Positions 39,465 through 56,810 of a stretch of DNA of 64,000 nucleotides are shown piece after piece. The notes under the pieces were generated by a model. That model was not told where the DNA came from. It searched no databases and was given only the letters and a program-made list of their open reading frames with translations. How positions within the stretch are numbered: position 1 is the first letter of the stretch; every line of letters starts with the position of its first letter. The stretch is from sequence record PQ330092.1, one strand, 5' to 3'. Position numbers and translations under genes: made by a program.

Positions 39465-39465
39465 T

Positions 39466-39828
39466 ATGAACGGGATAGAATTATCTTTCGTTGGTCAATT
39501 ACTAGTAATGGCGTATACATTTATCTTCTCACTGAATGCATTCGTGTGCATTGGGAAGTACTTCCATAAGCGACCATTATCAAATATATATGATGTAATC
39601 CAAAAGAGATATAGTCCAGCATATACTGTGTTGGGTACAGTATTCAATTTTGGTTTTATTGTATTAATAATTGGACTGTTCACATCCTCTTTGAATACAA
39701 TAACCTTCGGTCTTATGATATGTTCATTGGTATTAGCCGTAATTATATGTTGTTTAGTACTACACCTTGTGATACTATTATATATAAAGATCTCTGAAAT
39801 CCACCAACGTTTGGGTATGAGGAAATAA
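39466..39828 (+). CDS. 3-TM membrane protein, paralog family
   Basis: GAGG SD before ATG 39466; GKYFHKR..IYD. Confidence 0.75.
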   Translation: MNGIELSFVGQLLVMAYTFIFSLNAFVCIGKYFHKRPLSNIYDVIQKRYSPAYTVLGTVFNFGFIVLIIGLFTSSLNTITFGLMICSLVLAVIICCLVLHLVILLYIKISEIHQRLGMRK

Positions 39829-39829
39829 T

Positions 39830-40201
39830 ATGAGTTACCGTGAGATATTTTCCATTATTTCAATTATTATGTTCAGTACTGGAACACTGGTATGGTTATT
39901 ATATTTCTTCTGTATTAATCCAGTGTATAATATGTTATGTAATATTAAATCAAGTGCCGGATATATCACTTTTATGGTCTTTATGGGATATTATTGTCTA
40001 AGCATTTTAGGTGTTGTTTTGGTTGTTATATTTGATGTGGGGCCAAATAGTGATGGTATGGAAATACATGAATTAATAACCATGTTTGGATGTATGATAC
40101 CAACAGCACTACTGTTTGTAGCTACTGGTAGTGGATTGATAAAATTATATAATTATTTAAAATCCATTCATAATTCCATTCATAATAAGCGTATGTCATA
40201 A
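39830..40201 (+). CDS. 3-TM membrane protein, paralog family
   Basis: YFF..VYN. Confidence 0.75.
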   Translation: MSYREIFSIISIIMFSTGTLVWLLYFFCINPVYNMLCNIKSSAGYITFMVFMGYYCLSILGVVLVVIFDVGPNSDGMEIHELITMFGCMIPTALLFVATGSGLIKLYNYLKSIHNSIHNKRMS

Positions 40202-40243
40202 TAAAAAATCCAGTACTATTAAGTACTGGATGTATAAGGAGTT

Positions 40244-40906
40244 ATGATGAAATCAAAATTAGGTTTGTTTTATAAAAACTATTTTGTTAAACAACGTAAA
40301 TTTATAAAAAAATATTTCTCTGGTGAGAAGTCTAGTCCTATAATTTTTAAAAGACCAAGTTATAATACTTACTTAGCTGGTGCTAAACAGTCTAAGAAAT
40401 TTATTACTCTTTTAAATAAAAACAAAATTAAAGCTTCTTATGTTGAAACGAGAAGAAACTCATCAATAACTCCTGGTGATTTTATTGAGTACGGATGTTT
40501 CAATATTAAGTATAATGATAATACATACTTTATGGATATTGATTGTAATACATCCAATCTTTTTAACATTGTAGTAAATCCATTAAAACAATATAATGTT
40601 TATGGTGATTCTATTATCAAATTAATCAAAAACAAAGATGGCTTTGATTTTGAAATAAATGTTTTAGATGATAATTTTGACGAAGTACCCGTAAACCCTG
40701 AAATCTGTGATATTTTAAACAGTTTAAAAGGTAGTACCTACAATATATCATCTGATTTAATGTTTCAGTACTCATTAATCCATAAAGATATTGAAAAGTA
40801 TATTGAATGCTCCAGAATTTTGAATTTTCTCTATGATGAATTTAAAAAGAGTTCTAAAATAACCGCATACACTTTGTACAATATTCCTAAAATGGTGAAT
40901 CTTTGA
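40244..40906 (+). CDS. basic hypothetical protein, EExxFQ family
   Basis: AAGGAG SD; LMFQYSLIH; resembles 57770..58429. Confidence 0.75.
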   Translation: MMKSKLGLFYKNYFVKQRKFIKKYFSGEKSSPIIFKRPSYNTYLAGAKQSKKFITLLNKNKIKASYVETRRNSSITPGDFIEYGCFNIKYNDNTYFMDIDCNTSNLFNIVVNPLKQYNVYGDSIIKLIKNKDGFDFEINVLDDNFDEVPVNPEICDILNSLKGSTYNISSDLMFQYSLIHKDIEKYIECSRILNFLYDEFKKSSKITAYTLYNIPKMVNL

Positions 40907-41310
40907 CAAATACAGTACTGGCAACTCCACCGTCTGTAATATATTGTCCAGTACTGTAAATTTGTATACCATCGGTTAAGTAAGTTCTGTATAAAGTTGC
41001 TGTAACATATACGTTATTCATATTCATCTCTATTGGTAGTACACATTTGGTATAGGCTGAGACATCTGTTTGTGTACCTATACCTAATTGACCTGCGTTA
41101 TCGCCTGTGTTATAACCAGTTGCGTAAACACCTAATGAAGTTATAATATGATTAGAAAAATATGAATAACCCAAACTCTTGAGATTCTCTACTGTACAAC
41201 GTACCATCTGACATAAGGGCAAAAACTGTCGTATCAGATGAAGCTATTTTTGTAACAGAAGGTTGTATGTTCTTTTTTGATGATGTGATAATTCTTCGAA
41301 AGGGTAGCAT
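40887..41310 (-). pseudogene. internally deleted RCC1-like cassette
   Basis: MLPFRRII.. N-terminus (stops at 41152) joined out of frame to a C-terminal blade ending DSPF like 49566..50729. Confidence 0.7.
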
Positions 41311-41381
41311 TGTATCCTCCAAATGTAAATCGTTATTATATTTAGGACAAAAAAATGCCAGTACAAAATACTGGCTTTATT

Positions 41382-42587
41382 TTATATACCACGACTGGGT
41401 ATTTTATATAATTGAAATTTAGTGTAATAATCAGAAACTGTTGTACCTGTCGCTTGTGGGATATAGCCACTCAAATAAACATCCCCTTGATTATCCATAT
41501 ACACATTTGTACATTCACTTGGACAGAATAACTCGATGCTGCCAACTTTAGGTGCATCAACTGGAACTACAAATGTAGTACTTGATGTGGTATTACCGCG
41601 ACCGAGCCTACCATATGTGTTTATACCACACATATAAAGTGAATTGTTAGTTTTAACCGTAAGCCCACCATATGTTAATGAATTTGATTTCATTTCCATA
41701 TTATCTGATATTGGTAGAGTGGAGATTGTAGATAATACTGTCCCTGATGAAGCGGCTGAACTATTACCCAAGTTACCTTCCGATTGAATCCCACTTGCAC
41801 GAACTGTATATGTATTATTCGTGTTGTGTTTAGATACAACCCATGATGCACTCCCACCAAGTTCATAATGTATAACAGTATTGTTGGCTAATGCACCCAT
41901 TTGTGTCCATACTCTAATGTTAGTTTCACCATTACTTATACCAAGTGAACCCCATGTGTTTTGACCAGTGACCCAAAGTGTTTTATCAATTTTCTGCACA
42001 ATCACTGCACTTGAACCTGTTTTTACACTATCCACATTCGTATTAATTGAAGTAAATGTTGATAATCTTGTGGTTGTGTTATTACCAAAATATCCCTGTG
42101 TATTGGCCCCCATTCCATATAGCGTACCATTTTGAAGTAAAACAAAAATACCCTCCCCTACAATTTGAATGTCCTTAATTTGCGACAATTGTGTTGCATT
42201 GAATACTGATGTAAAATATGAAGTACAATCAGTATAAGTACTGACAGTACTTAATCCTGTACCAATAGCTCTACCTACGCCACTGTAATAAAATTTATTA
42301 TCTTCGGTTTGGATTAAATTAAAAGAACCTTGGGCTGTTCTAAAACGTTTTACATTTTGGTATATTAAAGCCCACTCTTTTACTTTCGCATTAGGTACAC
42401 CATTTCCGAATCCATAGTTTTGTGAACTAGTTCCACCTATACCCATTAAGTCTCCATTTTTATATAATAGTAAGAGTGCTGTTGCTGGAATAACTGACGC
42501 ACTATAACCATTGTAAATAAAGATTTCTTTCACTTCAGGAACTTTCATTTTATTTGCGTATTTTATCATCCTTGGAAAAGGTAACAT
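41382..42587 (-). CDS. RCC1/BLIP-II-like beta-propeller, MLPF cassette (401 aa)
   Basis: GxNxxGxLG repeats; MLPFPRMIKY. Confidence 0.8.
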   Translation of the reverse strand: MLPFPRMIKYANKMKVPEVKEIFIYNGYSASVIPATALLLLYKNGDLMGIGGTSSQNYGFGNGVPNAKVKEWALIYQNVKRFRTAQGSFNLIQTEDNKFYYSGVGRAIGTGLSTVSTYTDCTSYFTSVFNATQLSQIKDIQIVGEGIFVLLQNGTLYGMGANTQGYFGNNTTTRLSTFTSINTNVDSVKTGSSAVIVQKIDKTLWVTGQNTWGSLGISNGETNIRVWTQMGALANNTVIHYELGGSASWVVSKHNTNNTYTVRASGIQSEGNLGNSSAASSGTVLSTISTLPISDNMEMKSNSLTYGGLTVKTNNSLYMCGINTYGRLGRGNTTSSTTFVVPVDAPKVGSIELFCPSECTNVYMDNQGDVYLSGYIPQATGTTVSDYYTKFQLYKIPSRGI

Positions 42588-42658
42588 AAAATCCTCCTTT
42601 ATTCATTATACTATATTTAATCAAAAAGAAAAGCCAGTGTTAAGTACTGGCATAAAAT

Positions 42659-43828
42659 CTAAGCAGAAGGCATATTCTTCATCTTAATAAATGAAAATTG
42701 TGTACCAGTATTTGTGGTTTGATCAGTAAAATATGAATTACTCCCAGCCCAGTACAATTCATTATTGACTATACAATATATAACAGAACTCGAACTCTGT
42801 GAATACACACGACTTATATTTGATTGTTCTACTCCAGTACTGAACTGAACTACCCCCAACTGTGAACTTGGTATTACATTAGTTGGTCTACCTAAACCGT
42901 TAACACCCGCACCACCACCACATGTATATACTCCAGTACTATCAGTTGATATATTAACATAACCATTTCCGGCATTTTCAAATAGTATTTCACTGGGAAC
43001 AACACCAAATCCTGTAAGATCTATTTTCCTGAATGTAGTATAAACCGTAGAACCGCCAACACCTCTTCCACCATAATCATTCGAACCAGCCATATAGATA
43101 CTATATCCAGAACTTCCTAAACATAATAACTGTACGTTGTCATATAATATTTGCATAGATATAACGTTATCAGGAATACTCAATACCGTAAAAGTAGTTA
43201 AAGAAGAACTTCCAATATTACTACCAACCGATGTTCCACATCTGTAGTACTTACCGCCTTTTATATAATGGAACGATGAACCGCCTAACTTATGTGCTCC
43301 TATTTCACTTACCCCAGTATCTATAAGAATGGGAGATACAACTTTGTTATTAACACCTAACTCAGATCTACTGTTCATACCGAACCCATATAAACGACCA
43401 TCTAACATCAATATTAGTGTACTACCTGACGTACCTGCTGACGTAAATTCTATATTCTTTATTTGCGACACGTCAATACCTACAAATAATGAAGTTACTT
43501 CAGTCCAGTTAACATATGAACCACTAGCCCCAAAATATCCACCCATGTATAGTCCGGCACAATATAACTTATTATCAACAGTCTTTATTAATGTACCGGA
43601 TACACACGCCCAAAAATCATCAACTTCATAGGGTACATGTACCCAACCACCTAATACATCACTAGCATCCCCTGTACCTAATTTATAGTTCGAACCAGAA
43701 CCACGCATGTACATATTCCCTGTACTATAAAGTAATCCGACATGTAATTGACTACCATCCAATTTCTTTATTTCAGGAAGAGTTGGTTTAATATTTCCGT
43801 ACTTTAACATTCTTCCAAAAGGTAACAT
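42659..43828 (-). CDS. RCC1-like beta-propeller, MLPF cassette (389 aa)
   Basis: MLPFGRMLKYGNI; GxNxxxxLG repeats. Confidence 0.8.
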   Translation of the reverse strand: MLPFGRMLKYGNIKPTLPEIKKLDGSQLHVGLLYSTGNMYMRGSGSNYKLGTGDASDVLGGWVHVPYEVDDFWACVSGTLIKTVDNKLYCAGLYMGGYFGASGSYVNWTEVTSLFVGIDVSQIKNIEFTSAGTSGSTLILMLDGRLYGFGMNSRSELGVNNKVVSPILIDTGVSEIGAHKLGGSSFHYIKGGKYYRCGTSVGSNIGSSSLTTFTVLSIPDNVISMQILYDNVQLLCLGSSGYSIYMAGSNDYGGRGVGGSTVYTTFRKIDLTGFGVVPSEILFENAGNGYVNISTDSTGVYTCGGGAGVNGLGRPTNVIPSSQLGVVQFSTGVEQSNISRVYSQSSSSVIYCIVNNELYWAGSNSYFTDQTTNTGTQFSFIKMKNMPSA

Positions 43829-43838
43829 AATTTTCTCC

Positions 43839-45018
43839 TTAAATTTGTGGCAATTGGTATTCAGTTAAAGTCCATGTACCAACAACTGTCCCTACTGGAG
43901 ACATACCAGTGTAGTATAATTTCCCATTCACATATGCAAATAATGCATTGTCATTCGCAGCAACCAACGATGTTGACGGATCATAAACTACAGAATTTGG
44001 AAATTGTGCTTGGACGAAAATTGAAGCATTATTAGATGAATTGTTACCAAGCTGTCCATAATTATTATACCCTGTTCCAAAAATACGACTTCCATTTCTA
44101 TATAATAATCCCCTAGGATTTTGTGAATATGTTTGTATAAATTCAAAATCGGAAACATTAGTTAATTGTAAATAAGTACTTTGTGGAGTTAAAGATATCT
44201 TATTAGTATTAGATAGAACACCATTTCCTAATTGTCCGTGAATTTTGTGACCCTACACCATATAGCGGATAAGTATTATCTACATTAAGAACTATACCCA
44301 ACATATTGTTATATGAAATTATATCAACGGGGTACTGGCCTGTAGGAAAACTATACTTTGTCCAACTCGTCAAAGTATCAGTAGCAGAACCAGTTAACAA
44401 TGTACCAGTACTAGTTTTACCACATCTCCATGCTGAATTATCATTTTTAATTATCCAAGTTGGACTATTGAAAAATGAACTAACCTTTTTAACATTAATA
44501 TTAACCTGTGTAAATGATGTAAGTGTAGATGAACTACTACCCAACTCATAGGTTGAATTATCACCTATTGCGTAAAGAACACTATCATTTGTTAGTAAAA
44601 ACATATTACGAACATTTGGATATATCTCCTTGATATTATCCACATTAAAACCTGAAAAATAAGACGTACAATCAACAAATGTAGTACTTTGAACTGCACT
44701 AGATGTACCAGTCCAAAGGTTCCAACCTGCATAATAAAATTTATTATCATTGGTCTGAACTAAGCTATATGAAGCATTCCTTGTGCACCAAAAATTTTTC
44801 ACATTTTGCATTAAGCGAACCCATTTGGTCTGTGTTGTCGTATTGCCTAGTCCGAAAATACCAGCATTGTTGCCGCCTATACCCCACAAATCACCGTTAC
44901 TATACTGTAGCATCAATGTATTGTTGGTGAACGCCGATGGTGCTTGCATTTTAATTACATTAGCTGATGGTGCAGGTGCTATATTCCCGTACTTAACCAT
45001 TCTTGCAAAAGGTAACAT
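43839..45018 (-). pseudogene. RCC1-like cassette gene with a +1 frameshift at about 44243-44246
   Basis: Removing one A gives GSQIHGQLGN.. to TAA 43839 (392 aa), colinear with 52046..53233. Confidence 0.8.
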
Positions 45019-45099
45019 AAATCCCTCCTTTATTCATTATACTATATTTAATCAAAAAGAAAAGCCAGCACTCGGTACTGGCTTTTTGATATACATACT

Positions 45100-46287
45100 T
45101 CATATACCCAATTTAATTGGCTCATATTGAAATAGTGTAGGATTGGAGTCAGGGTAGTTCACCACTTCTGTTCCTGGATATGCACCATACCCGTTGAATG
45201 CACCTGAACCATATACTATACCATCGGTGCTAATTAATGCAGAATAATTGTTTCCCATACCAACTGACAGTACTGTCATCGTTGATGTACCTTCTGGTAG
45301 GTTTATAACCTGCTCTCTGAAACTATTACCAGAAGCTGTCGGAACACTAAATCCTAATCTGCCATTGCTACTATTAGTAGAACCAGTTGCATAACGTGTA
45401 CCTGTACTCAAATCCTGAATCCAACACGATGGTCCTTGACCCTCTGGATCAGTCCAGTATCTAAAATTAGCACTATCGTATGTAAAGGGAAGAACTGCTA
45501 ATCTGTTAGTTCCCTGGGAACCTGAAGTATACGTCAATCCATACAATGGAGTAAGCAAACCACGAACATATAATCCAGTACTCTTGGTGTATAACAATGA
45601 GCCGCCTGAACCATCCGAATTGATTGAAAGGATATCAGTATCACCTATATTTGTGAATACCTTAATATCAGATGATCCAGATGTTAATCCATAATTACCA
45701 CAGAACCAAGCTGTGTTATCGTTCTTTAACACAACAACTGTTTCATAAGAACAGGTTACCACATCTTTACAGTTAGTATTGATTTGTACAAATTCACCTA
45801 TCTTCCCCGTTAGGGTATTATTACCAAACTGTCCACGGTTATTTGAACCCATAGCATATAATATTCCAGTACTATTCAATGCGTATATTGTACTAGTTCC
45901 TGGTGTTTCACGGCGTGTAATTGCAATCTTTGTAATAGTTCCTAATGTGCTGAAAAATGAACTCACATCAACGAAACTTGTTTGTGAACCTAATCCAAAT
46001 TGACTTAAATTCCCCGCCGCCATATATCTTCCATCATTCATTAGACATATAGTATATGCTGGATGACAGTATATCATAGCTACATTTATAAGAACTAAGC
46101 TAGGCACTCCACCAACAATCGAAGTGTTGGGTGTACCAAAACGATATTCATTGTTTGACCCATATGCAAATAACTTACCATCAGTAGTTAAAAATAAATG
46201 CCCTAATCCATAAGTATTAATCTTGCGGATACCAGCGGGTGGTGGTATCTTATTCCCGTACGTTAACATTCTCCCAAAAGGTAACAT
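45100..46287 (-). CDS. RCC1-like beta-propeller, MLPF cassette (395 aa)
   Basis: MLPFGRMLTYGNK; GSNNRGQFG. Confidence 0.8.
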   Translation of the reverse strand: MLPFGRMLTYGNKIPPPAGIRKINTYGLGHLFLTTDGKLFAYGSNNEYRFGTPNTSIVGGVPSLVLINVAMIYCHPAYTICLMNDGRYMAAGNLSQFGLGSQTSFVDVSSFFSTLGTITKIAITRRETPGTSTIYALNSTGILYAMGSNNRGQFGNNTLTGKIGEFVQINTNCKDVVTCSYETVVVLKNDNTAWFCGNYGLTSGSSDIKVFTNIGDTDILSINSDGSGGSLLYTKSTGLYVRGLLTPLYGLTYTSGSQGTNRLAVLPFTYDSANFRYWTDPEGQGPSCWIQDLSTGTRYATGSTNSSNGRLGFSVPTASGNSFREQVINLPEGTSTMTVLSVGMGNNYSALISTDGIVYGSGAFNGYGAYPGTEVVNYPDSNPTLFQYEPIKLGI

Positions 46288-46295
46288 ATTCCCTC

Positions 46296-47471
46296 CTATT
46301 CCGGTAAAATCATTTTCTTCATTTTAACTTGTTGTGTACCTGCACTCTGTTCCTGGAACATAGAACCACTACCACACCAGTACACCTCATTTGCCCCCAC
46401 TAATGCGTATAACACACCGGAACTACCCTGAACTGAAAACGCCTGAACAGCCGGTGCAGTAACGGAATCCTCAAATAGTACTGGGTAGTACGCAGTTCTA
46501 GGTGTCGATGAAGTTATTTCTCTACCAAGAGCAACACCATTACCACAAGTATATAATTTGCCACCCTGAGTCATCGCAATCATATGAGCATTAATACAAG
46601 AATTATTCAGCGAACCCACATCTGGTACAATACCATAAATTGTAGGTGTCATACTAAATGGACTCATTATTATACTGGTGTCTCCATAACCAATACCTAA
46701 AGTATAATCCGTGTTTTGTCCAGCACTATACACTCTAATAGTACCATTATATGAAGTTAGTACTGACGTCGCATTTGTCGTACATGCAATACCCAGTACT
46801 GAACCAAATATATCTGAACTTACTGTGAATGTAGATAAACTAGAAGAGCTTGTTCCTAGGTTGTATCTAGCATTGCTACCACATCTGTAGTACTGACCGT
46901 TTTTCACATAATGAAACGCCGCTGCACGGTCTGTGCCTGCAATTAAAGTAACTCCGGTGTCAATCTTAATAGGTGTTGATTGGATTCCAGAAACGCCTAA
47001 TACACCAGCACCATTACGACCTATACCATATAAGTCCCCGCTACTTAACAAAATTAATATAGCACCATTGGTAGTTGTAGACTCGGTAGAAGCTATATTT
47101 TGTATAGTACTAAGTCCTGGAATTGAAGATAATATTGTTGTAATATTAGTCCACCCAGGACCGCTGGTTGCAACTACACCAACATAACCCATCTGACCAG
47201 CTAAGTATAATTCACCACTTGTAGTAAGTATAATAGTCGCGTAAGTTAAGCACCAAACATCAGCAACACTATATGGACATTTAATCCACCTATCCTGAAC
47301 GAATCCAGTACTGTCATTTCCTAACTTATATTCCACACCAGCACCACGTAGATATAAATTCCCATTATCGAATAACATACCAACGTGACTAATGGAAGTA
47401 CTAATCTTTCGCACTACACTGGGAGCAGGTGCAATATTCCCGTACTTAACCATTCTTGCAAAAGGTAACAT
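46296..47471 (-). CDS. RCC1-like beta-propeller, MLPF cassette (391 aa)
   Basis: True start 47471; closest to 42659..43828. Confidence 0.8.
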   Translation of the reverse strand: MLPFARMVKYGNIAPAPSVVRKISTSISHVGMLFDNGNLYLRGAGVEYKLGNDSTGFVQDRWIKCPYSVADVWCLTYATIILTTSGELYLAGQMGYVGVVATSGPGWTNITTILSSIPGLSTIQNIASTESTTTNGAILILLSSGDLYGIGRNGAGVLGVSGIQSTPIKIDTGVTLIAGTDRAAAFHYVKNGQYYRCGSNARYNLGTSSSSLSTFTVSSDIFGSVLGIACTTNATSVLTSYNGTIRVYSAGQNTDYTLGIGYGDTSIIMSPFSMTPTIYGIVPDVGSLNNSCINAHMIAMTQGGKLYTCGNGVALGREITSSTPRTAYYPVLFEDSVTAPAVQAFSVQGSSGVLYALVGANEVYWCGSGSMFQEQSAGTQQVKMKKMILPE

Positions 47472-47541
47472 ATTCCCTCCTTTATTCATTATACTATATT
47501 TAATACAAATAAGAAAGCCAGTACTTTGTACTGGCATAATT

Positions 47542-48684
47542 TCAATAAACATCCCAAGGTAATGGTGTCTTCCTAAATCCATACCTGGTTGTGCTCGCAC
47601 CATCGCCAGCAATGTATCGACCGATGCCACATTGGTATAACTCTGTACTACTACATATAGCACCACCAATAGTACCACTACCCCACTGAATTATATTAGA
47701 ATATGTTATTGGTAAATCACTACATTTAGTATATACACCAACGGTAGCAGCACCACTAATACCACCAAACATGCTTCGGTTAGCACCAGTGTAATATATA
47801 CCATCTGGACTCATAAATGCAGAGGTGTACGTTGTACTACAATCCACTGGACTTCTTATAGTATTAAGATCGCCAGGGTATGTTCTAGCAGCATATACGT
47901 AAACATTACCATCAGTAGTAATACCATTACCCAACTGACCACTGTTCTGACCACCACACGTAACTAACGATGCAGAACCAGAAACAATTGCAGTAGCATT
48001 ATACGAAGTACCCATTGCAATAGAAGCACCAGACAATAGTTTTGGTGTAACGATAGCTGTTGTATTACCCTGGCCTAATTCACCATTTGTGTTTCGTCCC
48101 CATGCGTATATAGAAGTCGTATCCAATCGACATAGTACTGAACCATAACTAAACGTATATCGCATGTCATTTACAGCAGAAGGCAAATTAACCTTAGTTG
48201 CAACACTAATAACACCACCAGTAACACCACTGTTTGCGTTCATGTTACGACCATATGCATATAAAGAACCATCTGAAGTTTTAATATGCATCATACCATC
48301 TGTGCAATATAATGCATCGATGCTATCCACCGCAACCGGACCCATACTGGCAGTTATATCGGTCCACCCCAGAGTAGTAGTACTAGAAATTAAGTTATTT
48401 CCTGCGTAAAGGATTCTATTATTATTAGTAACTACCACTGTATATCTAGCAGTAACTCCAATTAATCGAACATCAGTATATATCTTAGACCACGCACCTA
48501 GTGAATTGGTATTTGCATCCAAAAAGCCTAACTGCCCATCTGTATTGTATCCAATACCCCATGCATCACCTGCACTGTCCAATAACACTTCATGTGAAAA
48601 GCCAATCTTAAAATCTTTTATTGTAGGAACTACCGGAACTGGTGCAATATTCCCGTACTTAACCATTCTTCCAAAAGGTAACAT
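47542..48684 (-). CDS. RCC1-like beta-propeller, MLPF cassette (380 aa)
   Basis: True start 48684; GYNTDGQLG, WGRNTNGELGQG. Confidence 0.82.
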   Translation of the reverse strand: MLPFGRMVKYGNIAPVPVVPTIKDFKIGFSHEVLLDSAGDAWGIGYNTDGQLGFLDANTNSLGAWSKIYTDVRLIGVTARYTVVVTNNNRILYAGNNLISSTTTLGWTDITASMGPVAVDSIDALYCTDGMMHIKTSDGSLYAYGRNMNANSGVTGGVISVATKVNLPSAVNDMRYTFSYGSVLCRLDTTSIYAWGRNTNGELGQGNTTAIVTPKLLSGASIAMGTSYNATAIVSGSASLVTCGGQNSGQLGNGITTDGNVYVYAARTYPGDLNTIRSPVDCSTTYTSAFMSPDGIYYTGANRSMFGGISGAATVGVYTKCSDLPITYSNIIQWGSGTIGGAICSSTELYQCGIGRYIAGDGASTTRYGFRKTPLPWDVY

Positions 48685-48755
48685 AATTCCCTCCTTATTC
48701 ATTATACTATATTTAATACAAATAAGAAAGCCAGTATCAAGTACTGGCCTATATT

Positions 48756-49493
48756 TTAGACTGAATTGTTAGGATAATATCTCCCACGTCCCCATATTAT
48801 TCGCACAGCACCACCACCAGCAGCCGTATAAGAAAAATTATCCCATATACTACCACCACCACCATACATCTTACCAGCACCACCACTACCAGCACCACCA
48901 TTATATGAACCATCGTATCTACCGCCAATACCATTAGCACCTTGAACAATGATACCAGTACCACCACCCGTACCAATGAACGAGGTATTATAGAATGCAC
49001 CACCACCACCGCCGCCGCCAGCACCATTTTCACCAGTGATTGCATCTCCGTTACCACCTTTACCAGTGTAGCCACCAGCACCACCACCAATGACTGCACC
49101 ACCACTTACACCAGCGTTGCCCCCATTACCACCACCATCATTAATAGCGTTAGCAGCTTTCCCACCTAGTCCACCAACCCTATATTCACCAGTGAAGCTA
49201 ACACATAGTTTTTCAGTTCCACGATATAAACCGTTTTCAACTGCTGTAGTAGTGTTGGGATGTGTAAGAGAAACACTTAAGTACTCACCACCAGAAACCG
49301 GAATATTATTACGCCACGATAAGCCGCCACCAGCACCACGTTGACCACCCGGCGAAATAACACATACTGATATTTCGGTAACGCCAGCAGGAACTGTAAA
49401 TTGTGTTGTTCCTATTGTCGTGATTAATTGTTCACCATGTGGCTTATATTCAATTTTATTCCCGAACTTAACCATTCTTCCAAAAGGTAACAT
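48756..49493 (-). CDS. glycine-rich protein carrying the MLPF leader (245 aa)
   Basis: FTVPAGVTEISV..GGGG..GGGAVRIIWG; no RCC1 repeats. Confidence 0.75.
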   Translation of the reverse strand: MLPFGRMVKFGNKIEYKPHGEQLITTIGTTQFTVPAGVTEISVCVISPGGQRGAGGGLSWRNNIPVSGGEYLSVSLTHPNTTTAVENGLYRGTEKLCVSFTGEYRVGGLGGKAANAINDGGGNGGNAGVSGGAVIGGGAGGYTGKGGNGDAITGENGAGGGGGGGAFYNTSFIGTGGGTGIIVQGANGIGGRYDGSYNGGAGSGGAGKMYGGGGSIWDNFSYTAAGGGAVRIIWGRGRYYPNNSV

Positions 49494-49565
49494 AATTCCC
49501 TCCTTTATTCATTATACTATATTTAATACAAAAAGAAATGCCAGTATCAAGTACTGGCATTCTTT

Positions 49566-50729
49566 TTAAAATGGTGAATCTATTACAAATACTAAGCTAT
49601 TAATACCACCATATGTGATATCTGCCCCAGTACTATATACAAAATTACCATCAGTTATATAAGTACGGTTATACCCACCTGACATTTGTGATTTACTATA
49701 ATCAAAACCATCAGGTACGATTGCTTTGGTATATACTAATGCGTTAGTAGATGTACCAACACCTAACATACCAGCTTGTGTTGATTGGTTGTAGCCACAA
49801 CAATATATACCATCTGTTGTAGCAATAACTTGGTTATAATATGAAGTATTATGGGCCATACTGAGTACATCACCTGGTGGCATTAGGGAAGCAGTTTGAA
49901 CAGCAAATGCTCTTATATCAGTACTATTCACTCCATCTGCCTGTGCACCAAATCTTTTCGCCCCACCATTGGCAATTATGGTTTTTCCATTTGGATCAGT
50001 ACCAATAGCCATCGCCATTGAATTGTTATTATTTACATAGTACTCGATATTAATTACACTCCTTAGACTAGTAGGAGCACTAGTGTATACTGTATATAGA
50101 GAAGTACCACTAGTGCTAATTGCATTGACACGGCCTGTATAGTATAACCAACCGTTAGCAGTAACATAACCATGCATTAGATTACTTGCAAACAATTTAA
50201 ATGGTAATTGGTCTTCTTCAGTAGAGACTGTGCTCTGGACGAATTTAGTACTAACGTTGTTAGTTGTTGTCCCATTACCTAACTGACCTTCTGCCCCTGC
50301 CCCAGTACTCCATATTGTTCGATCTGAAAGTAATACACTTGTAGTCTGATTACTAACTGCCATATCTAATATTGGTAATGTTAATGTATTGAATGTTGGC
50401 ATAGCAGAAGTCCACACTGATACGGCTGCCCCTGTCATACCAACAGTAGTTGACGAACCACTGTACCATATTTCATTGTTGAATTTCTTAATAACCAAAG
50501 AAGTGGTACTTAACCAAAAATCTTCAACACCAGAAGTACTTAACGTCCATGTAGTAACGGTTTCTTTGTGACCTAAACCCAAAAGACCATTTGAATTCTG
50601 ACCACGTACATATAAATCCCCACTGCTTGTTAAAACTGCAACGTTGTAGTTATTGGCGAGTATTTTTTTAAATTTCGGTGGTGCTGGTGCAATATTCCCG
50701 TACTTAACAATTCTTGCAAAAGGTAACAT
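49566..50729 (-). CDS. RCC1-like beta-propeller, MLPF cassette (387 aa)
   Basis: GQNSNGLLG, GAGAEGQLGNG. Confidence 0.82.
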   Translation of the reverse strand: MLPFARIVKYGNIAPAPPKFKKILANNYNVAVLTSSGDLYVRGQNSNGLLGLGHKETVTTWTLSTSGVEDFWLSTTSLVIKKFNNEIWYSGSSTTVGMTGAAVSVWTSAMPTFNTLTLPILDMAVSNQTTSVLLSDRTIWSTGAGAEGQLGNGTTTNNVSTKFVQSTVSTEEDQLPFKLFASNLMHGYVTANGWLYYTGRVNAISTSGTSLYTVYTSAPTSLRSVINIEYYVNNNNSMAMAIGTDPNGKTIIANGGAKRFGAQADGVNSTDIRAFAVQTASLMPPGDVLSMAHNTSYYNQVIATTDGIYCCGYNQSTQAGMLGVGTSTNALVYTKAIVPDGFDYSKSQMSGGYNRTYITDGNFVYSTGADITYGGINSLVFVIDSPF

Positions 50730-50801
50730 ATTTCCCTCCTTTATTCATTATACTATATTTAATACAAAAAGAAAAGCCAGTATTAAGTACTGGCGAAATT
50801 A

Positions 50802-51992
50802 TTACAATTGTCTAGGTGTATCCAGAACATATCTATTTGTACTAGGACCACCATCATCATAAGTTCCGGTTGAATATATATTTTTCATATCCGCAGTTAG
50901 AAAAGTACGATACGAACCGCGATATATTTTTATTTTATCATACATAGAATATGATATTTCTGCTGGCATTGGACATATAGTAAATCTACCAATAGTAACA
51001 TTAGAACCAACACCCAACGAACCAGCATAACTACTCGCATTTAAACCAGTTGCATATACACCTGTACTCGTAACTAGTATACTAGATTGTGCTGGGTATC
51101 CTGTATGAATTGAATACAAAGTTCCAGTTGGTAATGTCGTACTATTGCTCCCTAATACAGCAAGTGCCGAACTGGTTGTGGTATTGTTACCCCATGCACC
51201 ATTACTCGCTAAACCACCAACTAGAAACTGACGTGCACCAGTACTTGGATTCTCAACCAAAGCACTGACTGAACCCATTGAGCATCCAGTGTATTGTAAC
51301 GTTTTTGTGTATGTTGTACTTGGTTTATATAAAGTATATTCATTAAATGGTGTCCATGTGGTACTGGTACTTATACCTGACGTACCACCACCAATATATA
51401 AATTATTTTGTGTATCAAAAAACATTACACAGTTATTTGTTGACAGTATTTGTGCAATATCAACATTAGGCGTGACAGCTTTTACAAATGATCCATCTGT
51501 TATTTGTTGAGTACTACCAGTACCATCAGCGAATTGTCTAGCCCCACTCCAACCAGTACTCCATATTGTATTATTATCCATTAAGAAAGTAAACCACGTA
51601 GTACCTGCATACATCTGTTTAATTGAAGTACTTGAACTTTGTGTGTATAAATTTTCAATATATTGGTTATAACTTAAAAATGATGTAGTACTAGTTGGTA
51701 AACCAATATAATCACCGTATCCACAATAAAAATAATTTAAGTCATTATCTTGTACTAACAAAGTTCCTTGTGACACCCAGAAATCTTTAACATTTTCTCT
51801 AATTAAGGTCCATGACTTTACTGCATTACTATTTCCTCTACCAAACTTCCCAAAACTATTATTTCCACGTGCGTATAGTTGACCATCCGTATAAAGAACG
51901 ACAACATCTAAATCAGTTGGTGTTATTTTCTTAATTTGTAGTGGTACAGGCACAATATTCCCATAATTCATCATTCTTGCAAAAGGTAACAT
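50802..51992 (-). CDS. RCC1-like beta-propeller, MLPF cassette (396 aa)
   Basis: GNNSFGKFG; similar to 49566..50729. Confidence 0.8.
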   Translation of the reverse strand: MLPFARMMNYGNIVPVPLQIKKITPTDLDVVVLYTDGQLYARGNNSFGKFGRGNSNAVKSWTLIRENVKDFWVSQGTLLVQDNDLNYFYCGYGDYIGLPTSTTSFLSYNQYIENLYTQSSSTSIKQMYAGTTWFTFLMDNNTIWSTGWSGARQFADGTGSTQQITDGSFVKAVTPNVDIAQILSTNNCVMFFDTQNNLYIGGGTSGISTSTTWTPFNEYTLYKPSTTYTKTLQYTGCSMGSVSALVENPSTGARQFLVGGLASNGAWGNNTTTSSALAVLGSNSTTLPTGTLYSIHTGYPAQSSILVTSTGVYATGLNASSYAGSLGVGSNVTIGRFTICPMPAEISYSMYDKIKIYRGSYRTFLTADMKNIYSTGTYDDGGPSTNRYVLDTPRQL

Positions 51993-52045
51993 AATTCCCT
52001 CCTTTATTCATTATACTATATTTAATACAAATAAGAATACCAGTA

Positions 52046-53233
52046 TCAAGTACTGGCATTGATTGTTGGAAGTGGGAACTCTTTCATGACAGATGAACTA
52101 CTTGCTGAAATATTATCAGGGGATTTCCCCGCGTAGTATAATTTATTATTAATGTACATATACAACGTTGCATCGTTCCCAGCTACAAGTGATTCACTTT
52201 TCTTAAAATTAACACCATCAGGTAAAATTGCTTCAACAAATGAACCAGAATTAATTGTACTGTTATTTGCCAATTGACCATTGTTATTATAACCAGTACT
52301 ATAAATTTTACCAGAGCTATAATATACCAGGCCACGGGATGAGATGTTTTCAATTCGAATGAATTCACTATCATCTGGAACGGTTTTCGATAACGTTGGC
52401 GTTAATTTATAACCCCCTGCTGTAGTATTATTACCCAACTGACCATCAGCTTGATAGCCCATTGTATACATAGGACATGATTCTGGTGTACCTTTAGTTA
52501 TAATACCAATATAACTCGCACTACAAAAAACGTCTATAGCTTCGGTAACAGGTGTGCCCTTATATTGAACCCAAGGAAATATATATGTGTTTTGAACTCC
52601 ATTTCCCAACGTTCCATGAGATGTTGTCCCAGTACGCCATATTGTATTATCTAGTTTAATAATCCAGTTAGAGGGTGTGATGGATGAACAGAATTTTTTA
52701 ACATTATCGACTAAAAATGTAAATTTATTAAAATATGATGCAGTGTTTAAACCAAACTTTGAATTTTTATTATCACCTAACAAATATAAACTATTATCAG
52801 TACCTAAAATCAAAGCATAATCAAGACCTACATATATCTCTTTGATTTTTGAAATACCAAATTGTGTAAAATAACTCGTACATTCAGTGAATGTTGTTAC
52901 AGTATTTGTTGTATTATTACCTAGCCATTTATCTAAACCACTATAAAAGAATCTATCATCATTTGTTCGTATTAGACAAAACCCATTCCCTGTACTGCAC
53001 CAAAAATCTTTAACATTACTATATATTTTTGTCCATTCAGTAACCTGTGTGGTATTACCTAACCCAAAAATTCCACCATTTTGAAGACCCATAGCCCATA
53101 CTGTTCCATTTACATCAAGTAGCATTGTACATGTAAATGAATAACCAACTGCTGGTGTTACTAATTTAGTAAAATTGGGAACATATGGAATGACTTTATT
53201 CCCGTACTTAACCATTCTTGCAAAAGGTAACAT
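52046..53233 (-). CDS. RCC1-like beta-propeller, MLPF cassette (395 aa)
   Basis: True start 53233; GYNNNGQLA. Confidence 0.82.
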   Translation of the reverse strand: MLPFARMVKYGNKVIPYVPNFTKLVTPAVGYSFTCTMLLDVNGTVWAMGLQNGGIFGLGNTTQVTEWTKIYSNVKDFWCSTGNGFCLIRTNDDRFFYSGLDKWLGNNTTNTVTTFTECTSYFTQFGISKIKEIYVGLDYALILGTDNSLYLLGDNKNSKFGLNTASYFNKFTFLVDNVKKFCSSITPSNWIIKLDNTIWRTGTTSHGTLGNGVQNTYIFPWVQYKGTPVTEAIDVFCSASYIGIITKGTPESCPMYTMGYQADGQLGNNTTAGGYKLTPTLSKTVPDDSEFIRIENISSRGLVYYSSGKIYSTGYNNNGQLANNSTINSGSFVEAILPDGVNFKKSESLVAGNDATLYMYINNKLYYAGKSPDNISASSSSVMKEFPLPTINAST

Positions 53234-53302
53234 AATTCCTCCTTTATTCATTATACTATATTTAGCACAAAAGAAAAGCCAGTATCAAGTACTGGCCTTA
53301 TG

Positions 53303-54412
53303 TTATTTTGGTAAATCAATTTTAGTAAAGACCGCAACATCTTCACTTGCTCCTGGTATGGCGTAATAAGAACCAGTACTATACACATCTCCATTTTTGG
53401 TTAATATCGATGTCAAACCATCACTAAAAAGAACATCCCTAATCTCACTAACTTCAACGGGTAATTGTAAATTGGTAGCACTATATATAGCACCAGTTTG
53501 AGAATTGTTTAATCCCAAACCACGGTTCGCCCCAACACCCTTCTGATATGTACTAGTAATTACCATTTGTGTAGCAGTATTTAAGGCAGGTGAATTCGTC
53601 ATAAACAACGGAGAACTATTAGGCAAAGTACTTACAGGAACTGCACGGAATGTAGTCGTACTTGAACTAAGAAAGTTTGGAGTTTGACCACATACGAAAT
53701 ATGATGTACCATTATAGTAATTTAATGCATTACCACCAATGGCTGCATCGATTACACCAGAACTACGCAATCCCCAAGTGTTAATTTGTGTTTGGTTCCC
53801 CGTACCATGCTGCCCACTACTATTCCATCCAGAACTATATAGCTTATTATCTAATGTAAGATACATACTATCATTCGCATTGGTCATTACTTTACGAACG
53901 TTCGTAGCACATTGAGTTAATGTATAAATTGATGATGAACCAATACCCAAAGAACCACGATATCCATTATCTCCTGCACCATAGAGTACTGAATTAGTGC
54001 TAAGTACAAATATTAAACCATTTGTACATACAATATTAGCAATTTCACTTACTGGTATAGCATTGGTAAACCAATTAGTCCTTTCAACTAATACAGTACT
54101 GTAAGAAGTAGTCGTAGAAGATGAGAACCAGTACGTTTGACCTGATGTCCATATAGTATTATCATTTTTAATAATAACAAGTGTACGATCACCCACGAAA
54201 AAATTAGAAACATCGGCACTTACTAATATCCATGAAGATACCGTGTTGGTATTACCATTTCCAGATTCACCACCTTGATTTCTACCTATGTAATATAAAT
54301 CATGTGAATCAGTCAATAAGAATTGACCTTGTGTAGAAGCACCAACTTTAATTATATTTTTAGGACCAGGTACAATATTTCCGTACTTAACCATTCTTCC
54401 AAAAGGTAACAT
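53303..54412 (-). CDS. RCC1-like beta-propeller, MLPF cassette (369 aa)
   Basis: True start 54412; GWNSSGQHG. Confidence 0.82.
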   Translation of the reverse strand: MLPFGRMVKYGNIVPGPKNIIKVGASTQGQFLLTDSHDLYYIGRNQGGESGNGNTNTVSSWILVSADVSNFFVGDRTLVIIKNDNTIWTSGQTYWFSSSTTTSYSTVLVERTNWFTNAIPVSEIANIVCTNGLIFVLSTNSVLYGAGDNGYRGSLGIGSSSIYTLTQCATNVRKVMTNANDSMYLTLDNKLYSSGWNSSGQHGTGNQTQINTWGLRSSGVIDAAIGGNALNYYNGTSYFVCGQTPNFLSSSTTTFRAVPVSTLPNSSPLFMTNSPALNTATQMVITSTYQKGVGANRGLGLNNSQTGAIYSATNLQLPVEVSEIRDVLFSDGLTSILTKNGDVYSTGSYYAIPGASEDVAVFTKIDLPK

Positions 54413-54485
54413 AAATCCCTCCTTATTCATTATACTATATTTAATACAAATAAGAAAAGCCAGTATCAAGTACTGGCATATCAAA

Positions 54486-55634
54486 TCACTGCAAAAATGA
54501 CATATCGACTTCGGTATAATTAAGAACGTTCTGTCCAGCAATACCTCCCATTACTACAATTGAAGCCCCACAATAATATAACTTCGAAGTATCAGTAAGT
54601 ATAAGTGAACCAGATGGGGTGCGTACCAAATTACACGAAGTATTAAACGAAGTATATGAAGGGGTATAAGAGTACTGATTAATATTATTACCAACACCTA
54701 ATTGACCAGACGAGTTGCTTCCAGATGCATAAAGTACTTCATCACCTTTAACTATATGTGACGCCATGTTACCAACACAAGTATATAAACTATAAACTCC
54801 TGAACTCAATAATGTTGGAGTTTTGTATTGTATATCTGTAGATGAAGAAGTACCACCTGTGCCAAATTCGTTCCCGTATTGTGCACCGAACTGTTTACCA
54901 CATGCGTACAAATTATTATCTGATTTAATAAAAAATGTACTCTGATAACTTACATCAAAATCTATAACATCCGAAGCAATCATCGTCACCCCAGTAATAG
55001 AAGTTTGATTACCTGTACCTAACTGATAGTAATAGTTAAAACCACAACCCCATAAAGTATTATCTTCTTTTAGGTATATGTTACCAACTGCCTTTTTAAC
55101 CGAAGTTATAGTATCTACCCTTTTGAATGTGTTAAAAGAATTAATGTTTGTACCATCACCAAATGATGATAGGTTAGAGTTATTGTTAGCTCCACAACAA
55201 TACAATGTACCATCGTTTGTTATCAAATTTACCTTCATATCATTAAAACTACTCATGTATTTTATATCAGAAACATTAATACCACTGGATGTTATCCACG
55301 TAGTACATTCCGTCCACAAAGTTTTTCTATCAGTTACACCAGTGAATGCCTTCGTGTTACCAGTGATAAAAACTTTTCCAGTACCTTTCTCTTCATACAA
55401 TTGACAATCACTACTGTTATTTTCCAATAGAACTCGTTTAACATTCTCCGCACTAAGAATAAATTTACTCGACGCTACACCAGTTCCAGTACCCCAATTC
55501 GTCGCAGAAGATGCATACAACTTATCAGTATAAGTATCATGAAGATACATGGAATCACTGGAATATATTTTAAAACGTCCATCATCACCAGGGGCAATAT
55601 TCCCGTAATTCATCATTCTAACAAAAGGTAACAT
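54486..55634 (-). CDS. RCC1-like beta-propeller, MLPF cassette (382 aa)
   Basis: True start 55634; GFNYYYQLG, GSNSSGQLG. Confidence 0.82.
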   Translation of the reverse strand: MLPFVRMMNYGNIAPGDDGRFKIYSSDSMYLHDTYTDKLYASSATNWGTGTGVASSKFILSAENVKRVLLENNSSDCQLYEEKGTGKVFITGNTKAFTGVTDRKTLWTECTTWITSSGINVSDIKYMSSFNDMKVNLITNDGTLYCCGANNNSNLSSFGDGTNINSFNTFKRVDTITSVKKAVGNIYLKEDNTLWGCGFNYYYQLGTGNQTSITGVTMIASDVIDFDVSYQSTFFIKSDNNLYACGKQFGAQYGNEFGTGGTSSSTDIQYKTPTLLSSGVYSLYTCVGNMASHIVKGDEVLYASGSNSSGQLGVGNNINQYSYTPSYTSFNTSCNLVRTPSGSLILTDTSKLYYCGASIVVMGGIAGQNVLNYTEVDMSFLQ

Positions 55635-55682
55635 AAATCCCTCCTTATTCATTATATCATATTTACCCCATAAAGAAAACCC

Positions 55683-55736: not shown

Positions 55737-55964
55737 ATGACAAATACTCTTAAGTACTACCTCAATACTCTAAATGAACTAGAGTACGGGGAATTTCTCG
55801 CGGATAGTTCGTGGCTAATTGAGCTAAAAAATTATAATAGTCCAGGATGCACCCTTATGATGAACAATGCAATTGATACCCTCATTGTGAGTATTTTACA
55901 CAGCAACATCTGCGGGGATAGCAATAAACAATTATCAAAAATCTTAGTACTGCTATCTATATGA
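55737..55964 (+). CDS. array microprotein 1 (divergent)
   Basis: AAGGAG SD; YYL..; hydrophobic C-terminus. Confidence 0.65.
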   Translation: MTNTLKYYLNTLNELEYGEFLADSSWLIELKNYNSPGCTLMMNNAIDTLIVSILHSNICGDSNKQLSKILVLLSI

Positions 55965-56164
55965 ATATCGAACAGTACTACATCGATGCACTACCAACAA
56001 AAGGTCTACGTGAAAGCCTACTGCATACACAAACTAATTTCAAACACCTCAAACGTAGCCCTAAACTCCTGAACTCGTACAGGAATAATAACATAAGAAA
56101 TGCTTTACAAGGGGTAGAATGTATGCAATACTATTACATCCTTACCCTATTAATCGAGTACTAA
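55961..56164 (+). CDS. array microprotein 2
   Basis: YY..L..I..A..YYILTLLIEY. Confidence 0.72.
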   Translation: MNIEQYYIDALPTKGLRESLLHTQTNFKHLKRSPKLLNSYRNNNIRNALQGVECMQYYYILTLLIEY

Positions 56165-56165
56165 T

Positions 56166-56375
56166 ATGAATACTGAACATAAAGAATTCTACACCAAATA
56201 CCTTAGCAACGAAGAACAATTGTTTCTAAGGAGTGTATCACCTGTAAGTACCAATACTCAATTCGGTAGAGATTGCTTTAATAATTGTATACGTAGTACT
56301 CTAGAAGCAATCGAATGCAATAACAAAAATATTATGTACTCAGGTTTAATAGGACTAATATATTTCTATGAATAA
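56166..56375 (+). CDS. array microprotein 3
   Basis: HKEFY; near-duplicate of 59747..59956. Confidence 0.78.
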   Translation: MNTEHKEFYTKYLSNEEQLFLRSVSPVSTNTQFGRDCFNNCIRSTLEAIECNNKNIMYSGLIGLIYFYE

Positions 56376-56800: not shown

Positions 56801-56810
56801 AGAGAATACT

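What the first reader, a model, noticed from the sequence alone, without database searches (positions are those of the whole stretch)
40887..55665. Plug-in cassette array: 13 genes share a DNA cassette and a constant MLPFxRMxKYGN leader on variable beta-propellers
Seen: 13 tandem - strand genes start MLPF(A/G/V/P/R)R(M/I)xxY(G)N. Ten are preceded by a near-identical ~110-bp block made of an AGTACT-stem terminator, a TAAATA box, AAGGAGG and the first ~15 codons. Beyond the leader the ~370-400-aa bodies are highly diverged RCC1/BLIP-II-like propellers falling into subfamilies (42659~46296; 43839~52046~41382; 49566~50802). Two junctions (43828, 46287) keep only an RBS. Established: TATAAATA is the T4 gp55 late promoter; RCC1 propellers are binding scaffolds; paralog arrays have been reported in related jumbo phages (from memory, so the array itself may not be new). 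Inference: the constant peptide is a docking or packaging tag for displaying interchangeable binding modules, and the DNA repeat drives accordion-like gain, loss and swapping.
Basis: partly seen in the sequence, partly recalled or inferred. Interest (0 to 1): 0.8.

Follow-up and report, generated by a model that had tools for sequence, protein, structure and literature searches.

The report
Tagged, shuffled virion-protein gene array
A giant E. coli phage carries 13 tandem genes that share a 12-residue N-terminal peptide and a repeated terminator-promoter block; relatives put the same peptide on four unrelated binding folds found in virions and swap genes at the repeat, so it looks like a plug-in system for virion-borne binding modules.

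Summary
The window is an Asteriusvirus jumbo coliphage, 99.6% identical to phage JP4. Thirteen minus-strand genes start with MLPFxR. Nine have the full block of terminator, TAAATA box and Shine-Dalgarno site; the first lacks the terminator, the last has a diverged copy, and two have only a ribosome-binding site.

- One member is a glycine-rich protein, not a propeller.
- One needs a +1 frame change.
- One is a deleted remnant.

New evidence:
- The leader is conserved as a peptide across at least five phage genera, with synonymous codon changes.
- It sits on four unrelated folds: RCC1 propeller, Kelch propeller, LamG lectin and Gly-rich domain.
- AlphaFold2 predicts it to be disordered.
- Cellular RCC1 homologues lack it.
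- Published virion mass spectrometry on five phage groups, JP4 included, detects these proteins.
- Nine related arrays hold at least 26 body types in different orders. Homology breakpoints fall inside the cassette and leader, from about -75 to +44 around the ATG.

Best reading: a virion-addressing tag plus a late-gene shuffling cassette, akin to PeSL cassettes and T-even internal-protein loci. The tag's function and where the proteins sit in the virion remain untested. No recent duplication was seen, so "accordion" is not supported.

The parts
54486..55634 (-). Gene 1 (type E), 382 aa, MLPFVRMMNYGN leader on an RCC1-like propeller
   Evidence: Pfam RCC1/RCC1_2
55635..55665 (-). First-slot cassette: gggTAAATATGATATAATGAATAAGGAGG, with no terminator stem. 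The same upstream sequence drives body types E, T, J, U and Y in different phages.
53303..54412 (-). Gene 2 (type A), 369 aa, leader on an RCC1-like propeller
54413..54477 (-). Cassette: stem-loop 54459-54477, T-run, TAAATA box 54423-54443, SD
52046..53233 (-). Gene 3 (type K), 395 aa, leader on an RCC1-like propeller
53234..53299 (-). Cassette: stem-loop 53275-53299, box 53244-53264, SD
50802..51992 (-). Gene 4 (type B), 396 aa, leader on an RCC1-like propeller
51993..52060 (-). Cassette: stem-loop 52036-52060, box 52004-52024, SD
49566..50729 (-). Gene 5 (type L), 387 aa, leader on an RCC1-like propeller. The whole unit is absent between B and C in 121Q.
50730..50794 (-). Cassette: stem-loop 50776-50794, box 50741-50761, SD
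48756..49493 (-). Gene 6 (type C), 245 aa, leader on a glycine-rich domain (homologues carry PF21722). Not a propeller.
49494..49562 (-). Cassette: stem-loop 49536-49562, box 49505-49525, SD
47542..48684 (-). Gene 7 (type D), 380 aa. AF2 gives a 7-blade RCC1-like propeller with a disordered leader. Detected in JP4 virions as JP4_582.
48685..48750 (-). Cassette: stem-loop 48728-48750, box 48695-48715, SD
46296..47471 (-). Gene 8 (type S), 391 aa, RCC1-like propeller. Detected in JP4 virions as JP4_581.
47472..47535 (-). Cassette: stem-loop 47517-47535, box 47482-47502, SD
45100..46287 (-). Gene 9 (type P), 395 aa, RCC1-like propeller. Its junction with gene 8 has only an RBS.
43839..45018 (-). 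Gene 10 (type F). Frame 0 gives 269 aa (44209-45018). A single +1 frame change near 44245-44252 opens about 133 further codons running to 43839. The same split occurs in all six phages compared.
   Evidence: the 269-aa product is phAPEC6 gp007, found in virions
45019..45086 (-). Cassette: stem-loop 45060-45086, box 45030-45050, SD
42659..43828 (-). Gene 11 (type G), 389 aa, RCC1-like propeller. Its junction with gene 10 has only an RBS.
41382..42587 (-). Gene 12 (type M), 401 aa, RCC1-like propeller. Detected in JP4 virions as JP4_577.
42588..42651 (-). Cassette: stem-loop 42633-42651, box 42599-42619, SD
40887..41310 (-). Gene 13 (type I). A remnant with diverged leader MLPFRRIITSSK. It is the N-type last gene of relatives with about 870 nt deleted, leaving it out of frame.
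41311..41375 (-). Diverged last-slot cassette: stem-loop 41357-41375, tccTAAATATAATAAC, GGAGG

Best explanation
The locus is a late-expressed array of low-copy virion proteins built on one plan: a roughly 12-residue N-terminal address peptide (M-[LI]-P-F-x-R-[MI]-x-x-Y-G-N), a short proline-rich linker, and an interchangeable binding domain.

Inferred: the peptide docks each protein onto one shared partner in the particle, so any body that carries it is incorporated.

Shown by comparison: each gene is flanked by the same block, about 65 nt of terminator, TAAATA late-type box and SD, followed by about 40 nt of leader codons. This roughly 110-nt repeat is where relatives differ, so homologous recombination within it deletes, inserts, replaces and reorders whole genes while keeping expression signals and tag intact.

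Unresolved: where the modules sit in the virion. I favour the outside (tail or capsid fibres), where they would bind host surface structures. Carriage inside the head is the main alternative.
For: Virion association. Mass spectrometry detects array members in five phage groups:
- JP4, 99.6% identical to the window: JP4_577, 581 and 582.
- phAPEC6: gp003, 005, 006, 007, 009, 010, 549 and 551. gp003-010 map to the array by coordinates; gp549 and gp551 are inferred to continue it across the record start.
- GAP32: gp001, with gp002 annotated as a virion structural protein.
- CBB: CBB_551 and 552.
- Erwinia Eneladusvirus ghosts: RCC1-like and Gly-rich ('PE-PGRS') proteins.

Selection acts on the peptide. 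M-[LI]-P-F is invariant in 62 leaders from five genera. Pro3 and Gly11 each use all four codons.

The tag is portable. It occurs on RCC1, Kelch, Laminin_G_3 and Gly-rich bodies. Cellular RCC1 homologues lack it. Gly-rich homologues in rV5-like phages carry a different N-terminus on the same body.

The tag is free of the fold. Mean pLDDT for residues 1-10 is 40-49, against about 91 for the rest of both models.

Shuffling. There are at least 26 body types in different orders across nine arrays. Homology ends at a median of +39 after the ATG (125 pairs) or begins at a median of -56 (128 pairs). There is one clean one-unit indel, and leader variants are exchanged within one body type.

Late type. 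The genus's structural genes carry ATAAATA upstream. Relatives are annotated with, or predicted to have, a gp55-like late sigma factor.

External location. The Gly-rich model best matches the Pam3 fibre and the Bxb1 tail tip. LamG and Kelch are typical surface binding folds.
Against: - No experiment links the leader to incorporation.
- MS signals are weak: 1-5 unique peptides per protein.
- The partner protein is unknown.
- Within a genus, leader similarity could be partly maintained by gene conversion.
- The box is only a 6-of-7 match to the late motif, and no transcript data exist.
- The fold matches for the Gly-rich model have low TM-scores (0.30).
- Ghost preparations do not separate internal from external proteins.
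Confidence: 0.6

Rival explanations
1. The leader is a capsid-targeting sequence of the T4 internal-protein kind. The proteins would be loaded into the prohead through the scaffold core and injected with the DNA. There they would act as a variable battery of inhibitors of host defence or other host proteins, in the way the BLIP-II propeller inhibits its target enzyme.
For: - T-even internal proteins are diverse bodies that share only a conserved CTS.
- The array is hypervariable between close relatives.
- The proteins are in virions at low abundance.
- phAPEC6 has an inner body of unknown composition, and its authors pointed to the RCC1-like proteins as candidates.
- Relatives encode a T4-type prohead protease.
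Against: - There is no Glu and no conserved L/I-x-E cleavage motif in residues 1-12 of the Asteriusvirus leaders.
- The Gly-rich body resembles fibre and tail-tip proteins.
- LamG lectin and Kelch bodies fit surface binding better.
- The proteins are still found in DNA-released ghosts. That is a crude preparation, so this argument is weak.
Confidence: 0.25
2. The leader has no role as a peptide. The conserved stretch would be a DNA or RNA element, such as a recombination repeat, a translation-initiation region or an operator for a translational regulator. The peptide would be a by-product, kept uniform by gene conversion.
For: - Within Asteriusvirus the first 36 nt are 86% identical and most codons are identical.
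- The U-tract after the terminator can pair with the SD in folded cassettes.
Against: - Across genera the amino acids hold while the codons change: Pro is CCT, CCA, CCG or CCC, and Gly uses all four codons.
- In Eneladusvirus and in most Munch junctions the DNA cassette is absent but the peptide remains.
- The folding z-scores are only -1.3 to -1.5.
Confidence: 0.07
3. The proteins condense or organise the phage DNA, as their database names say ('regulator of chromosome condensation', 'DNA condensation protein').
For: - Pfam and PHROG names.
- Speculation in the phAPEC6 paper.
Against: - The name comes from fold-level similarity only. The best structural matches are UVR8, RPGR and HERC2 as much as RCC1.
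- The same slots hold Kelch, lectin and Gly-rich proteins.
- Extreme divergence and turnover are unlike a core packaging function. CBB lacks RCC1 types altogether.
Confidence: 0.05
4. The leader is simply a structural part of the propeller, for example the closing 'velcro' strand.
For: RCC1-type propellers often close the ring with a terminal strand (established knowledge).
Against: - Residues 1-20 have low pLDDT, and the first blade strand starts at residue 22.
- The leader also sits on non-propeller folds.
- Cellular RCC1 proteins lack it.
Confidence: 0.02

Closest known systems
T-even phage internal-protein loci with a capsid-targeting sequence (IPI, IPII, IPIII, Alt)
   Same: - A short conserved N-terminal peptide sits on otherwise unrelated, fast-evolving proteins that end up in the virion.
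- The genes lie in a plastic locus.
   Different: - There is no sequence similarity to the T4 CTS and no L/I-x-E protease site.
- The bodies are large binding folds of 210-400 aa, not small basic proteins.
- Location inside the head is not shown.
- Up to 13 genes stand in one array.
PeSL cassettes (promoter-early stem-loop) of T4-like phages (Arbiol et al. 2010; Comeau et al. 2014)
   Same: - A repeated intergenic composite of stem-loop terminator, promoter and SD.
- Indels and replacements between close relatives are bounded by the repeats (searches compared with 66, 108).
   Different: - The promoter part matches the phage's late motif, not a sigma-70 early consensus.
- The repeat extends about 40 nt into the coding region, so a protein tag is exchanged with it.
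- The cargo is virion proteins rather than early ORFans.
- Mini-circles were not tested.
N-terminal adaptor domains of branched tailspike or fibre systems (e.g. CBA120, G7C, RaK2/K64-1; from memory)
   Same: A conserved N-terminal part anchors exchangeable receptor-binding bodies to the particle.
   Different: - Those anchors are folded domains of about 100 aa or more on trimeric spikes.
- Here the tag is a 12-residue, probably disordered peptide on monomer-type propeller or lectin folds.
RCC1-like repeat propellers (RCC1, UVR8, RPGR, HERC2, BLIP-II)
   Same: - Pfam RCC1 repeats are present.
- The predicted fold is a 7-bladed propeller, with TM about 0.75 to UVR8.
   Different: - There is no evidence of Ran-GEF or chromatin function.
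- The phage clade adds an N-terminal leader that cellular members lack.

Membership tests
RCC1-like repeat beta-propeller (PF00415, PF13540, PF25390) | RCC1 repeat profile hits above Pfam's cut-off | tested here: met
   Ten of the 11 intact members score above the RCC1 or RCC1_2 gathering cut-off. Member 42662-43828 matches only below it (RCC1 18.9 vs 21.7 bits; WD40_RLD E=1.7e-15). The Gly-rich member has no hit.
RCC1-like repeat beta-propeller (PF00415, PF13540, PF25390) | Seven-bladed propeller fold | tested here: met
   The AF2 model has pLDDT 91 and pTM 0.87. Foldseek's top hits are UVR8, RPGR, RCC1 and HERC2, with TM 0.65-0.77.
RCC1-like repeat beta-propeller (PF00415, PF13540, PF25390) | Chromatin or Ran-GEF activity, as implied by the name 'regulator of chromosome condensation' | not testable with these tools
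   Only name transfer supports it. Nothing found here does.
PeSL regulatory cassettes | Repeated intergenic composite of stem-loop terminator, promoter and SD | tested here: met
   Nine full copies plus two variants. G17's annotators also called the stems terminators.
PeSL regulatory cassettes | Promoter of sigma-70 early type (-35 and -10 at 16-18 nt spacing) | tested here: not met
   TATAAT is present but has no -35 at the right spacing. The sigma-70 scan is not enriched (87 sites against 84.7 expected). The box resembles the late motif ATAAATA.
PeSL regulatory cassettes | Indel and replacement breakpoints between relatives lie in the cassettes | tested here: met
PeSL regulatory cassettes | Excised mini-circles formed between neighbouring cassettes | not testable with these tools
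   This needs PCR or long reads from infected cells.
T4-type capsid-targeting-sequence proteins | Short conserved N-terminal peptide on unrelated bodies | tested here: met
T4-type capsid-targeting-sequence proteins | Proteins present in purified virions | tested here: met
   Published MS tables were read.
T4-type capsid-targeting-sequence proteins | Removal of the tag by the prohead protease at L/I-x-E | tested here: not met
   No Glu in residues 1-12 of the Asteriusvirus leaders (one Munch leader has Glu at position 9), and no conserved motif after the leader. This was tested by sequence only.
T4-type capsid-targeting-sequence proteins | Location inside the head and ejection into the host | not testable with these tools
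   No data.
T4-type (gp55) late promoter | TATAAATA-like element about 10 nt before the transcription start | tested here: inconclusive
   The cassette has aTTAAATAt. The genus's structural genes have (c/t)ATAAATA. The core TAAATA is shared, but no transcription-start data exist.
Gly_rich_2 (PF21722) phage proteins, for gene 48756-49493 | Profile match to PF21722 | tested here: inconclusive
   The window protein itself has no Pfam hit. Its homologues, Munch 544 and BF gp379 do. BFVD's top hits are Gly-rich domain proteins.

The most novel reading that the evidence does not exclude
The 12-residue leader is a portable virion-address tag. Any protein that carries it would be mounted on the outside of Rak2-like jumbo phages, for example on their hair-like tail and capsid fibres. 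The tagged cassette array would then be a recombination-driven, exchangeable repertoire of host-binding modules: a natural plug-and-play display system that could also be used to load chosen cargo onto giant phage particles.
Probability: 0.35. Interest if true: 0.85.

Novelty: new variant of a known kind. Interest (0 to 1): 0.72.

Why it matters
These genes are annotated in dozens of jumbo-phage genomes as 'chromosome condensation' proteins, and that name is probably misleading.

If the leader is an address tag, four things follow:
- It explains how giant phages carry a dozen fast-changing binding proteins.
- It gives a handle on the unexplained hair-like fibres or inner body of these particles.
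- It shows a late-gene counterpart of PeSL shuffling in which a protein tag travels with the regulatory cassette.
- It offers a simple peptide for loading cargo onto a 350-kb phage.

All of this can be tested directly in laboratory E. coli with existing phages, for example Sharanji on K-12.

Tried and rejected
- Velcro-strand idea. Rejected by low pLDDT in the leader and by the non-propeller bodies.
- Sigma-70 promoter reading of the cassette. No usable -35, and the scan is not enriched.
- Rfam. Only two tRNAs at the start of the window and nothing in the array.
- RNA structure of the cassette. U-tract/SD pairing appears, but the z-scores are only about -1.4.
- Sequence search of the Gly-rich family against the PDB. 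Nothing found.
- Whether rV5-like phages have an array with their own M[LI]E[LM][LM] tag. PVP-SE1 gene 19 is solitary, so I dropped this.
- The GAP32 paper is not held. Its MS result is taken second-hand from the CBB paper.
- Literature searches for a structural study that places RCC1-like proteins in a jumbo virion found only the phAPEC6 paper.
- CMSTMSU was left out of the array comparison because its record is fragmented by frameshifts.

Full report
**Identity and observation.** The window is an Asteriusvirus (121Q/PBECO4-like, 'Rak2-like') jumbo coliphage. Bases 45000-52000 are 99.6% identical to Escherichia phage JP4. Thirteen minus-strand genes begin with ATG-YTA-CCN-TTT (MLPF). Their start codons lie at 55634, 54412, 53233, 51992, 50729, 49493, 48684, 47471, 46287, 45018, 43828, 42587 and 41310. 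That start pattern occurs nowhere else in the window, in the flanks of nine related loci, or in 50 kb of the phAPEC6 structural module.

**The cassette.** Nine genes are preceded by the same block:
- a GCCAGTAC...GTACTGGC stem-loop with a T-run;
- the exact 21-mer TAAATATAGTATAATGAATAA (9 exact copies plus 1 with two mismatches, against 0.03 expected);
- AAGGAGG;
- the ATG.

The first gene has the box but no stem. The last has a diverged copy. Genes 43828 and 46287 keep only an RBS.

**Leader against body.** Leader residues 1-12 are 75% identical and nt 1-36 are 86% identical. The bodies are only 24-40% identical at the amino-acid level. Six of the 11 invariant columns in a 20-sequence alignment are M1, P3, F4, R6, Y10 and N12.

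**What the bodies are.** Ten members are RCC1-repeat proteins; Pfam scores nine of them above its cut-off and matches 42662-43828 only below it. An AlphaFold2 model of 47545-48684 (pLDDT 91, pTM 0.87) is a seven-bladed propeller. Its best matches are UVR8, RPGR, RCC1 and HERC2, with TM about 0.75 for the best, UVR8.

- 48756-49493 is a 245-aa glycine-rich protein. It is homologous to Gly_rich_2 (PF21722) phage proteins. Its model (pLDDT 90.5) best matches the cyanophage Pam3 fibre and a Bxb1 tail-tip chain, though with low TM-scores.
- 43839-45018 needs one +1 frame change.
- 40887-41310 is a remnant of the 'N-type' last gene of relatives, with about 870 nt deleted.

**The leader is a peptide, it is portable, and it is not part of the fold.**
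- The same N-terminus heads tandem genes in Salmonella phage Munch (MIPFxRILxYGN, 12 genes), Cronobacter phage GAP32, Yersinia fHe-Yen9-04 and Serratia BF (MLPFPIIS...), with different codons.
- Over 62 leaders, M-[LI]-P-F is invariant, while Pro3 and Gly11 each use all four codons.
- A degenerate leader pattern scanned over IMG/VR hit seven contigs. Six are 348-378 kb jumbo phages and one is a 109-kb contig.
- In those contigs the leader also heads Kelch propellers and Laminin_G_3 (ConA-like lectin) proteins as well as Gly-rich ones.
- Cellular RCC1 homologues lack the leader.
- Gly-rich homologues from rV5-like phages carry a different N-terminus, M[LI]E[LM][LM], on the same body.
- In both AF2 models, residues 1-10 have pLDDT 40-49 and the first blade strand starts at residue 22.
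- A nearly invariant Pro15 follows, in an IAPxP-type linker.

**Virion association.** Published virion proteomes contain these proteins:

| Phage | Members detected |
|---|---|
| JP4 (essentially this genome) | JP4_577, 581, 582, which are window genes 41382-42587, 46296-47471 and 47542-48684 |
| phAPEC6 | gp003, 005, 006, 007, 009, 010, 549, 551. gp003-010 map to the array; 549 and 551 are inferred across the record start. gp007 is the 269-aa frame-0 product of the F type. |
| GAP32 | gp001, with gp002 annotated as a virion structural protein |
| CBB | Seven tandem leader genes CBB_548-554 (three Kelch, four LamG-type, two of them with a Pfam hit). Five are annotated structural; 551 and 552 are MS-identified. 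|
| Erwinia Eneladusvirus ghosts | 'DNA condensation' and 'PE-PGRS' proteins |

Peptide counts are low, which fits low copy number.

**Shuffling.** I clustered the gene slots of nine phages and found at least 26 body types. Gene orders include:
- window: E A K B L C D S P F G M I
- G17: T J A L E Q B C H V F G I
- 121Q: E Q A O B C W D H F R N
- PBECO4: J A O E B Z D K M N

No array has one type twice. The constant first-slot promoter drives E, T, J, U or Y in different phages, and one body type can carry different leader variants. When two phages share the upstream gene but not the downstream one, homology ends at a median of +39 after the ATG (IQR 37-44, n=125). In the reverse case it begins at a median of -56 (n=128). 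Window B-L-C against 121Q B-C is a clean one-unit indel bounded by cassettes.

This is the behaviour described for PeSL cassettes in T4-like phages. There are two differences. The promoter part resembles the genus's late motif: structural genes of phAPEC6 carry (c/t)ATAAATA, and the cassette carries TTAAATA. The repeat also runs into the coding leader. Because no recent duplicates exist, 'accordion' amplification is not supported.

**Mechanism and rivals.** My best reading (confidence 0.6) is a virion-address tag on interchangeable binding modules, expressed late and shuffled by recombination at the cassette.
- Shown: the anatomy, peptide-level conservation, the range of body folds, breakpoint positions and the MS presence.
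- Inferred: that the tag mediates incorporation, that expression is late, and the location.

The main rival (0.25) is a T4-like capsid-targeting function with injection of the proteins. Against it are the missing protease motif and the fibre- and lectin-like bodies. A purely nucleic-acid role for the conserved stretch (0.07), a DNA-condensation role (0.05) and a structural velcro strand (0.02) are poorly supported.

**Novelty.** The multi-copy RCC1-like genes were noted before. I found no description of the shared leader, of its spread over four folds and five genera, or of the cassette breakpoints. The phAPEC6 authors suggested DNA condensation. I rate the finding a new variant of known kinds (CTS-type tags and PeSL-type shuffling).

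Noticed in passing
window 43839-45018 (shift near 44245-44252); 121Q genes 234/235 in L004: Two array members need a +1 frame change, and the frame downstream of the shift is still under purifying selection. In the N type, variable sites by codon position are 6/3/31, with 32 synonymous against 7 amino-acid-changing codons. In the F type they are 0/0/3. This points to programmed +1 frameshifting or separate translation, not decay.
   Followed up: partly
window 37421-40201 (+): Eight tandem small membrane-protein paralogues (104-141 aa) face the array. The same block lies beside the leader array in CBB (CBB_543-547), fHe-Yen9-04 and Serratia BF, so the whole locus is syntenic across genera.
   Followed up: partly
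window 55737-60528 (+): About 23 tandem genes of roughly 60 aa form another paralogue family (starts MN..HKEFY, ends LKLISI or LLIYRY) on the other side of the array.
   Followed up: no
proteins P0025-P0106; L015: Gly-rich domain proteins of rV5-like phages of about 150 kb start with a different conserved N-terminus, M[LI]E[LM][LM], on a body homologous to window gene 48756-49493. This may be a second lineage-specific tag. PVP-SE1 gene 19 is solitary.
   Followed up: partly
window cassettes, e.g. 48685-48750: The pyrimidine tract after each terminator is complementary to the AAGGAGG of the next gene, so read-through RNA could mask the SD. The folding z-scores are only about -1.4.
   Followed up: partly
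window 47472-47678, 54413-54541, 55635-55652: An in-frame ATG inside the cassette (ATGAATAAAGGAGG..., MNKGG.M) and longer upstream ORFs cause over-extended gene calls, for example JP4_581 at 418 aa instead of 391.
   Followed up: yes
window 94-165 and 1686-1758 (+): Two tRNA genes.
   Followed up: no
window 40208-40231: A CCAGTACT...AGTACTGG stem-loop of the same style as the array terminators lies between two plus-strand genes. G17 annotates the equivalent site as a terminator.
   Followed up: no
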